DNA from: Octopus bimaculoides
Lineage: Eukaryota
Reading direction: 5' to 3'
Length of the DNA stretch: 64,000 nucleotides
NCBI RefSeq assembly: GCF_001194135.2
Contig: NC_068981.1
Location: 8,103,518 to 8,167,517, forward strand
Shown: piece after piece, positions 10,420 to 11,669 of the stretch
How positions within the stretch are numbered: position 1 is the stretch's first letter
Layout of the letters: every line of letters starts with the position of its first letter
Notes under the pieces: generated by a model
Seen by the model: the letters and a program-made list of their open reading frames with translations, nothing else
What the model was told of the DNA's origin: nothing
The model's database searches: none
Translations under genes and position numbers: made by a program

Positions 10420-10861
10420 ACAAACACACAAGGAAGTTATTTATTGCAGCAGAACATCAGGTGAAGATTCTCTGCCTATCAAGAAGTCCATGCGTTTGGC
10501 CCAACCAAATGAAGAAAAACTCTGTCCCACTGCACAAACAAACCAAGTCTCACCAGTAACGCATTTCGAATCATTGGTTTGTGTTGCTATTGTTTGTGTT
10601 GTTGTTATTTAACCTTAGGCCTGCCTTGATTGACATGGCTTCGCATCAAAAGCCTCCTGTGACCATCCAGTTCTTTTGTTTGCTTTTATTGTGACTTAAT
10701 CAAATATGCCCTGCATCTTTTAAGGCAATACAGAATAACTTGACACTGATTTGACGCTGTTGTTATTTGGTGATCCACCGTGTTGTATATTCTTTATTGG
10801 TTCATGATGTGATTTTGTGGTCTATAATTTGATGTTGGATTTAGAAACAAATCACTCATTG

Positions 10862-11425
10862 AAAGTAGAAATACATTTCTAAACCTCTGAGAGAGATTTA
10901 TGCAATAGCAGCACCATAAAGTGATGGTATGTTGTCAACTTAATGTAACAGTCTCATGAAAGGGAAGAATGCTACTGTTATTTAGCCCAAGAAAACATCG
11001 TTTCCTGTTGGACTTGACACATTTCCTGTGTCCTTATGTTTTCAAAGTAGAAACAAGCACCTCCACCCAGTAAAGCCAGCATCCAGAGACTAGTTTCAGA
11101 GTTATTGCTCATCGTCAGTCTGGAGTAGTATGGCTTGCTAGTTGTCGATGCCTATCTGCTTTTGAAAACATATATGCTTCAAGTGAAATACATTCACTGA
11201 TTTTTGAAAATAGAAATAATACATTTCTAAATCTCTCAGAGAGATTTATGCAGTAGCAGCACAATAAAGTGATAGTATGTTGTCAACTTAATATGACAGT
11301 CCCATGAAAACATAAGGACACAGGAAATGTGTCAAGTCCAACCAGAAACGGTGTTTTCTAGGGCTAAATAACAGTAGCATTCTTCCTTTTCATGGGACTA
11401 TCACATTAAGTTGACAACATACTAT
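10862..11425 (-). mobile_element. Non-coding HHR-bearing retroelement: ~348-bp tandem unit plus inverted segment, 14-bp TSD
   Basis: TSD caaatcactcattg at 10848-10861 and 11426-11439. Direct repeat 10870-10960 / 11218-11310. Segment 11305-11425 is the inverse of 10924-11044. HHR at 11082-11124. Confidence 0.85.
11082..11124 (-). ncRNA. Minimal type I hammerhead ribozyme motif
   Basis: Minus strand UCCAGA-CUGACGA-U(GAG caauaa CUC)U-GAAA-CUAG-U-C-UCUGGA: 6-bp stem I, intact core, palindromic stem III ACUAGU and a GUC cleavage triplet. Activity untested. Confidence 0.85.
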
Positions 11426-11669
11426 CAAATCACTCATTGTTGCATTATAACCGGCATCTTTTTCATACTCCCTTCGTTGATTTTTTGATAAAAGTATGGA
11501 GATGGAGCGTTCGTCAATATGAGAGGATAAAACGACGTCAGTTTATGGAATTCTGAATACAAAACACAGTGAAGTCGTTGTATTCATGAAGATGCGACAG
11601 ACTTTTAATAACTGATAAAGAAATCTTACTTTAAACGCTTGATATACATATTTATATGAATACATAACT

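What the first reader, a model, noticed from the sequence alone, without database searches (positions are those of the whole stretch)
10848..11439. Retrozyme-like insertion: 348-bp tandem unit with an intact hammerhead, inverted end and 14-bp TSD
Seen: a 564-bp non-coding insert bounded by an exact 14-bp direct repeat, containing about 1.3 head-to-tail copies of a ~348-bp unit plus a ~120-bp inverted segment. A complete type I HHR lies on the minus strand (6-bp stem I, CUGACGA, GAAA, ACUAGU stem III, GUC). Established: minimal HHRs with palindromic stem III occur in Penelope-like termini and in small tandem non-LTR retrozymes and can cleave as dimers; variable-length TSDs indicate target-primed reverse transcription. 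Inference: a small self-cleaving, possibly circular RNA mobilised by a PLE or LINE RT. The greater-than-unit copy fits reverse transcription around a circle or of a multimeric transcript.
Basis: partly seen in the sequence, partly recalled or inferred. Interest (0 to 1): 0.9.

Follow-up and report, generated by a model that had tools for sequence, protein, structure and literature searches.

The report
Hammerhead-ribozyme retroelement insertion in octopus-like DNA
A 564-bp piece of non-coding mobile DNA carries a convincing hammerhead self-cutting RNA motif and was pasted in with the tandem-plus-inverted scars typical of Penelope-like retrotransposons; it is an old, probably dead copy of a known kind of element (animal "retrozyme") that the literature I could search does not describe in cephalopods.

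Summary
An exact 14-bp duplication (10848-61 / 11426-39) brackets 564 bp: 1.29 head-to-tail copies of a 348-bp unit plus a 123-nt inverted arm. A type I hammerhead motif lies on the minus strand (11124-11082, cut 11088|11087).

The motif is unlikely to be chance. My descriptor finds it once in the window, against 0.005 expected. A covariance model built only from four experimentally validated retrozyme hammerheads scores it at 27 bits (E about 2e-5); the next hit scores 11.7. No Rfam hammerhead family matches it, and helix II is weak (3 bp plus U.U).

A second, 5'-truncated copy (48255-48475) has a 12-bp duplication and the same inverted arm but no ribozyme. A decayed relative lies at 62045-62264.

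Partial tandem, inverted 5'-truncated copy, a one-sided terminal extension and variable duplications are the published Penelope-like insertion signature.

Best reading: an old insertion of a non-coding, hammerhead-bearing, Penelope-dependent element (non-LTR retrozyme type). Untested: catalysis, circular RNA, conservation across copies, and whether 348 bp is a true unit. With one ribozyme, this locus cannot release a monomer. It is a new member of a known kind and of modest interest.

The parts
10848..10861 (.). Left target-site duplication of copy 1 (CAAATCACTCATTG)
   Evidence: Exact 14-bp direct repeat with 11426-11439 (D5). It abuts the ends of the repeat homology.
10862..11209 (-). Complete 348-bp unit. 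The RNA sense is the minus strand, with the 3' end of the RNA at 10862. GC is 37.9% and there is no ORF above 49 aa.
   Evidence: Spacing of 348 between repeat copies (D1). GC and fold; ORFs. As a circle, the minus-sense fold is -96.3 kcal/mol against -71.9 +/- 5.5 for shuffles (z -4.5); the plus sense gives z -1.9.
10862..10921 (-). Terminal 'tail' segment (A), about 56-60 nt. It is present at the direct end and at the tandem junction but absent from both inverted arms.
   Evidence: Alignment A1 and arms alignment. The inverted arms of copy 1 and copy 2 stop within 4-5 nt of each other, at about 10918-10922.
10922..11044 (-). Arm segment (B), which is repeated in inverted orientation at 11305-11427
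   Evidence: I1: 123 nt, 93% complementary.
11036..11172 (-). 137-nt imperfect hairpin that continues helix I of the hammerhead. The ribozyme core sits at its tip.
   Evidence: Minus-sense MFE -49.3 kcal/mol, z -5.0, 0 of 200 shuffles as good. Plus sense -41.8, z -3.8. Helices listed.
11082..11124 (-). Type I hammerhead motif. Helix I is 6 bp, core CUGACGA, helix II is U.U plus 3 bp with loop CAAUAA, then GAAA, palindromic ACUAGU helix III, C17 at 11088. Predicted cut between 11088 and 11087.
   Evidence: Sequence. Only descriptor hit in the window, with 0.005 expected. Model R1, built from four validated retrozyme hammerheads, gives 27 bits, E 1.8e-5. No Rfam hammerhead hit.
11210..11309 (-). 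Partial second unit in tandem (segment A' plus the first 41 nt of B). The junction is ambiguous within 11204-11209 because of TTGAAA microhomology.
   Evidence: D1 and D2; 10859-10961 vs 11204-11309, 88.7%.
11305..11427 (+). Inverted 5'-truncated arm (reverse complement of B). It joins the partial unit through a 5-nt TGAAA overlap.
   Evidence: I1 and I2..
11426..11439 (.). Right target-site duplication of copy 1
   Evidence: D5.
48243..48254 (.). Left target-site duplication of copy 2 (ATACTAAACTTT)
   Evidence: Exact 12-bp direct repeat with 48476-48487 (D6).
48255..48475 (-). Second, 5'-truncated insertion of the same family. It has the tail plus 80 nt of the arm (48255-48392), a 5-nt turn, and an inverted arm (48398-48477). 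It has no ribozyme segment.
   Evidence: 84% identity to 11203-11427 over 225 nt. Arms are 80 nt and 89% complementary (I1). Sequence.
48476..48487 (.). Right target-site duplication of copy 2
   Evidence: D6.
62045..62264 (+). Old, diverged relative (about 70% identity over unit positions 43-245). RNA sense here is the plus strand. The hammerhead core is partly deleted.
   Evidence: nhmmer E 5.9e-7. Pairwise alignment shows CCGCUGA--AAUAACCCGGAAAUCGCGAUA in place of the core.

Best explanation
This is an old insertion of a small, non-coding, hammerhead-bearing retroelement of the animal non-LTR retrozyme type. It was most likely mobilised in trans by a Penelope-like element (PLE) reverse transcriptase and endonuclease.

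Shown:
- The element is transcribed-sense on the minus strand.
- Its 348-nt unit contains a type I hammerhead at the tip of a long hairpin.
- Two independent insertions in this window have 14- and 12-bp target-site duplications and a constant 3' end (10862 and 48255).
- Both also have a variable internal extent, and an inverted 5'-truncated arm that lacks the terminal 56-60 nt.

Inferred mechanism:
- An RNA longer than one unit served as template. It could be a multimeric transcript of a tandem source, a circle, or two RNAs joined by a template jump.
- It was reverse-transcribed from its 3' end at a staggered nick. This produced A-B-C-A'-B' on what is now the plus strand.
- Synthesis then switched strand at a TGAAA microhomology, either by second-strand priming or by snap-back. 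That gave the inverted arm.
- In the source RNA the hammerhead would act as a dimer through its palindromic ACUAGU helix III. It would cut multimers into about 348-nt monomers that a tRNA ligase could circularise, as shown for other animal retrozymes.

This particular copy has one ribozyme and repeats that have diverged by 7-11%. It is a dead copy, roughly 10-15 million years old by the published octopus TE clock.
For: Anatomy and duplications.

The hammerhead is not chance:
- One descriptor hit in the window, on the strand predicted from the constant-end logic, with 0.005 expected.
- Model R1 was built only from coral, mussel and axolotl retrozyme hammerheads taken from the supplement of PMC7229834. 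It scores the motif at 27 bits, E 1.8e-5, against 11.7 bits for the next hit.

Its odd features have precedents in ribozymes that cleave as dimers:
- A U.U at the base of helix II occurs in axolotl Ax353.
- A 6-nt palindromic helix III occurs in Ax330.
- Helix I of 6 bp, helix II of 4, and helix III of 1-2 bp with a palindromic loop is the stated 'canonical' metazoan type I architecture.

Strand and structure:
- The minus-sense unit folds at z -4.5, the plus sense at z -1.9.
- The ribozyme hairpin folds at z -5.0 against -3.8.

PLE signature: 5' truncation, partial tandem, adjacent inverted 5'-truncated copy, a tail at one end only, and non-autonomous derivatives are all described in PMC8557442.

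Fit to the retrozyme family:
- Retrozymes have 170-400 nt units, low GC and longer duplications; mussel units are 350-390 bp.
- Retrozymes have been argued to be PLE derivatives.
- PLEs are abundant in octopus genomes.
- There is no coding capacity and no tRNA-like head.
Against: - No Rfam hammerhead family matches, even at E <= 10 on a 91-nt search. As a control, Rfam reported only one of three R1 hits in another contig, and that one below its gathering score.
- Helix II is weak, and the isolated 81-nt ribozyme region does not fold better than shuffles (z +0.27).
- The ribozyme segment exists in only one copy here, and the one distant relative has lost the core. Conservation and covariation are therefore untested.
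- Only one tandem junction exists, so 348 bp may not be a real unit.
- No PLE reverse transcriptase or GIY-YIG ORF was found in the window, so the partner is unidentified.
- No other copy was found in 22 kb of Octopus sinensis or in the metagenome, prokaryote and viral collections. None of those collections is expected to hold cephalopod DNA.
- Catalysis and circular RNA are unmeasured.
Confidence: 0.6

Rival explanations
1. The locus is a 5'-truncated terminal fragment (pLTR / 3' end) of an autonomous, hammerhead-bearing Penelope-like element. The apparent 348-bp 'unit' would be where reverse transcription of one RNA stopped and jumped to the 3' end of another. On this view there is no small retrozyme family and no circular RNA.
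For: - Most PLE insertions are 5'-truncated and form partial tandems with inverted copies, and PLE hammerheads lie in the pLTRs.
- Only one tandem junction exists here.
- Unit 1 differs from unit 2 and from the inverted arm at 5/41 sites each, whereas those two differ at 2/41. This weakly suggests two different templates.
- The circular fold shows no strong pairing across the junction.
Against: [quoted passage not shown] Canonical 6-bp/4-bp motifs are assigned to retrozymes.
- This motif has the canonical layout and is found by a model built from retrozyme ribozymes.
- The unit length falls inside the retrozyme range.
- The whole unit is unusually structured in the ribozyme sense.
Confidence: 0.25
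2. It is a LINE-dependent SINE-like element. The hammerhead-like motif would be non-functional or a relic, and the tandem and inverted parts would come from L1-style twin priming or template switching.
For: - Variable-length target-site duplications also fit LINE target-primed reverse transcription.
- LINE reverse-transcriptase fragments lie in the window.
- SINEs are very abundant in octopus genomes.
- Rfam hammerhead models do not match.
Against: - There is no tRNA-like head (ARAGORN tests tRNA and tmRNA only, not 5S or 7SL).
- There is no A-rich or microsatellite 3' tail.
- Both insertions (2 of 2) carry an inverted arm that ends within 4-5 nt of the same internal position and lacks the terminal about 58 nt. 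This fits the PLE one-sided tail, not sporadic twin priming.
- In twin priming the inverted part comes from sequence upstream of the direct part and does not overlap it.
- The chance expectation for the hammerhead motif is about 0.005 per window.
Confidence: 0.08
3. It is a chance motif in an assembly artefact or local rearrangement (fold-back duplication), not a mobile element.
For: The window is a gap-rich draft with 8554 N. Inverted and tandem structures are known to trouble short-read assemblies.
Against: - The repeated parts differ by 7-11% rather than being identical.
- A second copy 37 kb away has its own exact 12-bp flanking duplication.
- There are no N runs inside 10600-11700.
- The motif statistics argue against chance.
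Confidence: 0.03

Closest known systems
Metazoan non-LTR retrozymes (Cervera & de la Pena 2020, PMC7229834), especially mussel Mg353 and axolotl Ax330/Ax353
   Same: - Non-coding unit of about 350 nt, low GC (38%) and duplications longer than 4 bp.
- Type I hammerhead with a 6-bp helix I, a 4-position helix II and a palindromic helix III suited to dimeric action.
- The U.U at the base of helix II matches Ax353; the 6-nt palindromic helix III matches Ax330.
- The predicted RNA is highly self-paired.

   Different: - Known retrozymes are arrays in which each unit has a ribozyme. Here there are only 1.29 units with one ribozyme, plus an inverted arm.
- There is no sequence similarity outside the ribozyme core.
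- I found no report in cephalopods. The only cephalopod mention is a count of 235 Rfam Hammerhead_1 hits in the giant squid.
- Expression and circularity are unknown.
Penelope-like element insertions and their non-autonomous derivatives (Craig et al. 2021, PMC8557442; Cervera & de la Pena 2014, PMC4209133)
   Same: 5' truncation, partial tandem (pLTR-like), adjacent inverted 5'-truncated copy, an extension present at one end only, variable duplications, and a hammerhead in the repeated terminal region.
   Different: - There is no RT / GIY-YIG ORF.
- The one-sided extension is about 56-60 nt rather than 30-40.
- The ribozyme has the canonical layout rather than the minimal PLE layout (shorter helix I, extra nucleotide after position 9).
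Schistosoma Sm-alpha / Rfam RF00163 Hammerhead_1 consensus
   Same: - N7 = C (CUGACGA).
- Helix I reads UCCAG next to the core.
- Loop 2 starts CAA and is 6 nt.
- An internal loop follows a 6-bp helix I.
Compare the consensus aUccagCUGAcGAGUCCCAAA..GGACGAAA..UCcuggAu and the N79 sequence.
   Different: - All eight helix II positions differ, and helix I is shifted by one pair.
- The Rfam model does not report it at E <= 10.
Plant LTR retrozymes (Cervera et al. 2016, PMC4918200)
   Same: A non-autonomous retroelement that carries hammerheads and is proposed to spread through circular RNA.
   Different: Plant elements have type III hammerheads in LTRs, PBS/PPT, 4-bp duplications, high GC and 600-1000 nt size. 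None of these applies here.

Membership tests
Hammerhead ribozyme, type I (canonical metazoan) | Conserved core CUGANGA ... GAAA ... UH, with the open end at helix I | tested here: met
   CUGACGA, GAAA, A15.1-U16.1 and C17 were read on the minus strand, 11118-11088. This is the only descriptor hit in the window.
Hammerhead ribozyme, type I (canonical metazoan) | Helix I about 6 bp, helix II about 4 bp, helix III 1-2 bp capped by a small palindromic loop (definition in PMC4209133) | tested here: met
   Helix I is UCCAGA/UCUGGA, 6 bp. Helix II has 4 positions, of which 3 pair and the base is U.U. Helix III is an A-U pair on a palindromic CUAG loop. The U.U has a precedent in Ax353.
Hammerhead ribozyme, type I (canonical metazoan) | Loop 1 - loop 2 tertiary contact nucleotides | tested here: inconclusive
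   The internal loop UACUAC/UGC after 6 bp, and loop 2 CAAUAA, resemble the Rfam and N79 layout. No conservation or 3D test was possible.
Hammerhead ribozyme, type I (canonical metazoan) | Match to Rfam RF00163 (or other hammerhead models) at the gathering score | tested here: not met
   There was no hammerhead hit at gathering, nor at E <= 10 on 901 nt or 91 nt. A custom model built from validated retrozyme hammerheads gives 27 bits, E 1.8e-5.
Hammerhead ribozyme, type I (canonical metazoan) | Conservation and compensatory changes across homologous copies | tested here: inconclusive
   Only one copy in the window holds the segment. The distant relative at 62045-62264 has lost the core. No cephalopod genome could be searched.
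Hammerhead ribozyme, type I (canonical metazoan) | Site-specific self-cleavage | not testable with these tools
   This needs in vitro transcription of monomer and dimer constructs.
Metazoan non-LTR retrozyme | Tandem repeats of a 170-400 bp unit | tested here: inconclusive
   One complete 348-bp unit plus 0.29 of a second gives one junction only. The size is in range.
Metazoan non-LTR retrozyme | A type I hammerhead in every unit (definition of an 'active' retrozyme in 10.64898/2026.07.22.740005) | tested here: not met
   There is a single hammerhead at this locus, and the partial second unit stops before the ribozyme segment. This concerns the locus, not the family.
Metazoan non-LTR retrozyme | Non-coding, low GC (<45-50%), duplications longer than 4 bp | tested here: met
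   The longest ORF is 49 aa. GC is 37.9%. Duplications are 14 and 12 bp.
Metazoan non-LTR retrozyme | [quoted passage not shown] | not testable with these tools
   Only the fold could be tested: the circular minus-sense unit gives z -4.5 with 65% of bases paired.
Penelope-like element insertion (autonomous or non-autonomous) | 5' truncation, partial tandem (pLTR), adjacent inverted 5'-truncated copy, and an extension at one end only | tested here: met
   Copy 1 retains 448 nt and copy 2 retains 138 nt of direct sequence from the same 3' end. Both have inverted arms that lack the terminal 56-60 nt.
Penelope-like element insertion (autonomous or non-autonomous) | ORF with a telomerase-like RT and GIY-YIG endonuclease (autonomous members) | tested here: not met
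   There is no such ORF in the element. None was recognised in the window. The element is therefore at most a non-autonomous derivative.
Penelope-like element insertion (autonomous or non-autonomous) | Sequence shared with the 3' end or pLTR of an autonomous PLE of the same genome | not testable with these tools
   No cephalopod genome, Repbase or Dfam was available.
tRNA-derived SINE mobilised by a LINE | tRNA-related 5' head and an A-rich or simple-repeat 3' tail | tested here: not met
   ARAGORN finds nothing. The ends read ...AGAAAUGUAUUUCUACUUU and ...CUAUCA(CUUU). Derivation from 5S or 7SL RNA was not tested.
MITE / DNA transposon | Terminal inverted repeats at both ends and a duplication of fixed length | tested here: not met
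   The two termini are not inverted repeats of each other, and the duplications are 14 and 12 bp.

The most novel reading that the evidence does not exclude
This may be the fossil of a cephalopod retrozyme family that still produces about 348-nt self-cleaving, circularised RNAs. Its insertions carry the full Penelope-like signature: partial tandem, inverted 5'-truncated copy, one-sided tail and variable duplications. If so, it would give direct structural evidence, in an invertebrate, that PLE machinery mobilises retrozymes with canonical hammerheads.

A bolder variant is also not excluded. The long inverted arm could be inherited as part of the master RNA rather than made at each insertion. 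Both inverted arms share differences from all forward arms, and these read as G.U pairs in the RNA sense. The element would then be a hairpin-forming RNA in an animal known for heavy double-stranded RNA editing.
Probability: 0.3. Interest if true: 0.5.

Novelty: new member of a known kind. Interest (0 to 1): 0.35.

Why it matters
Animal retrozymes are a recently recognised class. They have been proposed, mainly from co-occurrence and pLTR phylogeny in vertebrates, to be non-autonomous derivatives of Penelope-like elements. The authors of that work say invertebrates were not examined and that the life cycle is poorly documented.

This locus pairs a canonical-type hammerhead unit with the insertion scars peculiar to Penelope-like elements, in a mollusc lineage where I found no description of such elements. 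If genome-wide copies confirm it, the family would extend retrozymes to cephalopods. It would also give insertion-structure evidence for which reverse transcriptase moves them.

On its own, a single decayed copy changes little.

Tried and rejected
- **Rfam scans.** I scanned the whole window at gathering, then 901 nt and 91 nt at E <= 10. There was no hammerhead family hit. The only near hit, MIR848 (22.6 bits against gathering 90), simply reflects the inverted arms.
- **Exact-pattern scans.** I searched metagenome (two scans), prokaryote-genome and viral collections with conserved 22-37-mers and with the ribozyme sequence. All gave 0 matches. These collections are not expected to hold cephalopod DNA.
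- **Attempts to reach more octopus DNA through proteins.** Three homologue searches gave few hits. They pointed to Octopus bimaculoides and O. sinensis entries.
  - One 22-kb O. sinensis locus (L001) has no copy.
  - Two other eukaryote-like contigs (L002, L003) have none either.
  - Look-ups of short ORFs inside the element found nothing.
- **Coding content.** Pfam on ten TE-like ORF fragments of the window gave only weak PHD/C1 hits and no PLE domains.
- **tRNA-like head:** none.
- **Bacterial-type promoter/terminator scan:** irrelevant here. It only re-found a small arm hairpin.
- **Isolated ribozyme fold.** It is not better than shuffles. The cofold of two copies did not predict the helix III duplex, so thermodynamics alone neither supports nor refutes dimer action.
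- **Literature string search** for the Schistosoma enzyme strand: no hit in RNA letters. The DNA form was found in a protocol paper.
- **Rejected readings:** MITE or foldback transposon, SINE, and assembly artefact (see rivals and membership rows).
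Full report
**1. What is there**

- An exact 14-bp direct repeat, CAAATCACTCATTG, lies at 10848-10861 and 11426-11439. It brackets 564 bp (10862-11425).
- Inside, 10870-10961 recurs at 11218-11309 (91%, spacing 348). Gapped blastn extends this to 10859-10961 vs 11204-11309 at 88.7%. 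That gives one full 348-bp unit plus 0.29 of a second, head to tail.
- The last 123 nt (11305-11427) are the reverse complement of 10922-11044, at 93% (I1). They overlap the partial unit by 5 nt (TGAAA).
- Tandem Repeats Finder does not call the array, as expected for 1.3 copies.
- There are no N runs in the region, although the window as a whole is a gap-rich draft: 8554 N and 32% GC.

**2. The hammerhead**

The minus strand reads UCCAGA-CUGACGA-UGAG-CAAUAA-CUCU-GAAA-CUAGU-C|UCUGGA (11124 to 11082).

Evidence against:
- No Rfam hammerhead family matches at gathering.
- None matches at E <= 10 on 901 nt or on 91 nt.
- Helix II is only 3 bp closed by a U.U.
- As a monomer, helix III is a single A-U pair on a CUAG loop.
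- The 81-nt region alone folds no better than shuffles.

Evidence for:
- A descriptor requires helix I >= 5 bp, CUGANGA, helix II >= 3 bp with one base mismatch allowed, GAA, A...U helix III >= 2 pairs, and H17. It hits once in the whole window on both strands, here. In 400 dinucleotide-preserving shuffles it hits 0.005 times per window. I wrote the descriptor after seeing the motif, so I also made an independent test.
- I took the hammerheads of four experimentally validated retrozymes from the supplement of PMC7229834: coral Amil224, mussel Mg353, and axolotl Ax353 and Ax330. I aligned them and built a covariance model without the octopus sequence.
- With filters off, that model finds 11082-11124(-) at 27 bits, E about 1.8e-5. 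The next hit in the window scores 11.7 bits.
- The two weak features have precedents in those same validated ribozymes. [quoted passage not shown] Ax330 has the 6-nt palindrome ACAUGU as helix III. Both cleave poorly as monomers and well as dimers.
- PMC4209133 defines the canonical metazoan type I motif as helix I 6 bp, helix II 4 bp, and helix III 1-2 bp with a small palindromic loop that works in dimers. This motif fits that definition.

Why Rfam may miss it:
- The RF00163 consensus printed (aUccagCUGAcGAGUCCCAAA..GGACGAAA..UCcuggAu) shares N7 = C, the UCCAG of helix I and the CAA start of loop 2 with this motif.
- It differs from the motif at all eight helix II positions. That plausibly explains the miss.
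- As a control, RF00163 reported only one of three motifs that my model found in another contig, and that one below gathering.

**3. Structure and strand**

- Helix I continues into a 137-nt imperfect hairpin (11036-11172) with the ribozyme core at its tip. Minus-sense MFE is -49.3 kcal/mol, z -5.0, with 0 of 200 shuffles as stable. The plus sense gives -41.8, z -3.8.
- Folded as a circle, the 348-nt unit gives -96.3 against -71.9 +/- 5.5 for shuffles (z -4.5) in the minus sense. In the plus sense it gives only z -1.9. In the minus-sense fold, 113 pairs form, 10 of them G.U, and GC is 37.9%.
- The RNA-level structure therefore favours the strand that carries the ribozyme.

**4. Other copies**

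*Copy 2.*
- blastn of the element against the window finds a second copy at 48252-48471 (84% to 11203-11427).
- It is flanked by an exact 12-bp direct repeat, ATACTAAACTTT (48243-54 / 48476-87, D6).
- It consists of the same left end, 80 nt of the arm, a 5-nt turn and an 80-nt inverted arm at 89% (I1).
- It has no ribozyme segment.

*Comparison of the two insertions.*
- Both share the left end (10862 / 48255) and keep different lengths of direct sequence (448 vs 138 nt).
- Both have an inverted arm whose outer end falls within 4-5 nt of the same internal position. The terminal 56-60 nt (segment A) is missing from both inverted arms.
- A constant 3' end with variable 5' extent places the RNA sense on the minus strand. 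This agrees with the ribozyme strand and with the fold asymmetry.

*Third relative.*
- nhmmer finds a distant relative at 62045-62264 in the opposite orientation (E 5.9e-7).
- It aligns through the arm and hairpin base, but the hammerhead core is partly deleted. It says nothing about selection in source copies.

**5. What kind of element**

- It is non-coding: the longest ORF is 49 aa.
- It has no tRNA-like head.
- It has no A-rich or simple-repeat tail.
- Its two termini are not inverted repeats of each other.

Craig et al. 2021 describe the insertion signature of Penelope-like elements:
- strong 5' truncation;
- partial tandems that form pseudo-LTRs;
- a short extension ('tail') at only one end;
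- non-autonomous derivatives that share the 3' end.

Every one of these is seen here, in 2 of 2 insertions. The tail is longer here (about 58 nt against 30-40). PLE pLTRs carry hammerheads. Cervera & de la Pena 2020 describe non-LTR retrozymes as 170-400-nt non-coding low-GC tandem units with type I hammerheads and longer duplications, 350-390 bp in a mussel, and name PLEs as the likely mobilisers. A 2026 preprint argues from vertebrate data that retrozymes are non-autonomous PLE derivatives. PLEs are common in octopus genomes. TE protein fragments in the window best match Octopus bimaculoides and O. sinensis entries, so an octopus-like source is likely though not proven.

**6. Mechanism**

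Steps shown:
- target-site duplications of 14 and 12 bp;
- a constant 3' end;
- more than one unit in tandem;
- a strand switch at a 5-nt microhomology;
- a ribozyme motif in the RNA sense.

Steps inferred:
- An RNA longer than one unit was reverse-transcribed from its 3' end at a staggered break. The present plus strand is the first cDNA strand (A, B, C, A', B').
- Synthesis then continued on the opposite sense, by priming from the second nick or by snap-back. That gave the inverted arm, which lacks the tail.
- In source transcripts, the hammerhead would cut multimers through dimeric helix III pairing (ACUAGU with ACUAGU). A tRNA ligase would then circularise the monomers, as shown for axolotl RNA with RtcB.
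- I cannot say whether the template was a circle, a multimeric transcript or two RNAs. Unit 2 and the inverted arm differ at 2 of 41 sites while each differs from unit 1 at 5 of 41. This leans weakly against a single rolling circle.

Status of this copy:
- With one ribozyme it can be cut once but cannot release a monomer.
- Parts that should have been identical at insertion now differ by 7% (copy 1) and 11% (copy 2).
- The published octopus calibration (Jukes-Cantor 0.09 is about 25 My, 0.2 is about 56 My) gives roughly 10-15 My. This is my own rough estimate.

**7. Rivals**

- *Truncated autonomous PLE.* The main rival is that the 348 bp is not a unit but the truncated 3' end or pLTR of an autonomous PLE, joined to another copy by a template jump. 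One junction cannot exclude this. Against it stand the canonical rather than minimal ribozyme layout, the retrozyme-range length, and the strong sense-specific fold.
- *LINE-dependent SINE with a relic motif.* This is unlikely, given the recurrent inverted arm with the same internal end and the absence of a SINE head or tail.
- *Assembly artefact.* This is unlikely, given the diverged repeats and a second copy with its own duplication.

**8. Novelty and verdict**

This is a new member of a known kind. I found no description of retrozymes or hammerhead-bearing elements in cephalopods. The nearest mention is a bare count of 235 Rfam Hammerhead_1 hits in the giant squid genome. The locus is a tidy natural example that joins a canonical-type hammerhead unit to PLE-type insertion scars, which bears on a question the field calls open.

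It is also one old, inactive copy. The decisive tests could not be run here: conservation across genomic copies, tandem arrays, a partner PLE, cleavage and circular RNA. No cephalopod genome was reachable.

Interest 0.35. Confidence in the best explanation 0.6.

Noticed in passing
window 48243-48487: A second insertion of the same family. It has an exact 12-bp flanking duplication and an 80-bp inverted arm but no ribozyme segment. It lies outside the coordinates of the finding and was not mentioned in it.
   Followed up: yes
window 62045-62264 (+): A distant relative of the unit, about 70% identical over unit positions 43-245 and in the opposite orientation. The hammerhead core is partly deleted. 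A palindromic AUCGCGAU follows GAA where copy 1 has ACUAGU. Its boundaries and duplication were not determined.
   Followed up: partly
window 10915-11050, 11263-11312, 11300-11434, 48306-48484 (arms alignment): At one site (column 41) both inverted arms, from copies 1 and 2, carry T where all three forward arms carry C. Two more sites (columns 18 and 37) partly show the same split. Columns 41 and 37 read as G.U wobbles in the minus-sense RNA; column 18 reads as an A.C mismatch. This could mean the inverted arm is inherited from a master copy, or it could reflect recurrent change in a double-stranded RNA. There are too few sites to decide.
   Followed up: partly
L002 14637-15414 (ENA ERZ22157276, contig ctg13156l, unknown eukaryote, 35% GC): The retrozyme-hammerhead model finds three motifs within 800 bp. 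Two are on one strand, 377 nt apart (22.4 and 16 bits), and one is inverted (22.1 bits). Rfam Hammerhead_1 scores the inverted one at 21 bits, below gathering. Only about 20 nt around the ribozyme is repeated.
   Followed up: partly
window 2-265, 42884-43742 (+), 43814-44065 (-): Fragments that read like LINE-type reverse transcriptase, with a PHD/C1-like zinc finger. The best protein hits are Octopus bimaculoides UniRef entries. No Penelope-like RT or GIY-YIG domain was recognised.
   Followed up: partly
window 44195-44428 (-), 59241-59843 (+): Mariner/Tc1-like transposase fragments. The second is 67% identical to 'protein GVQW3' of Octopus sinensis.
   Followed up: partly
window, many sites (e.g. 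1200-1900, 4600-4900, 5830-6530, 12100-12700, 45900-46500): About 8.5 kb of N runs, mostly flanked by TA/CA microsatellites. This marks a short-read draft assembly, so repeat structures near gaps should be treated with care.
   Followed up: no
window about 15500-15700, 22560-22790, 41200-41500, 42884-42950, 55990-56150: A recurring short repeat whose translations read ...PRCHAVGLNxEP... / ...EPGTMWLVxKLLTTQP... It is probably an abundant SINE-like family. ARAGORN calls no tRNA in the window.
   Followed up: no
window 11285-11409 (+): A weak Rfam hit to plant MIR848 (22.6 bits, gathering 90, E 0.037). It is caused by the inverted arms forming a long hairpin and is not a microRNA call.
   Followed up: yes
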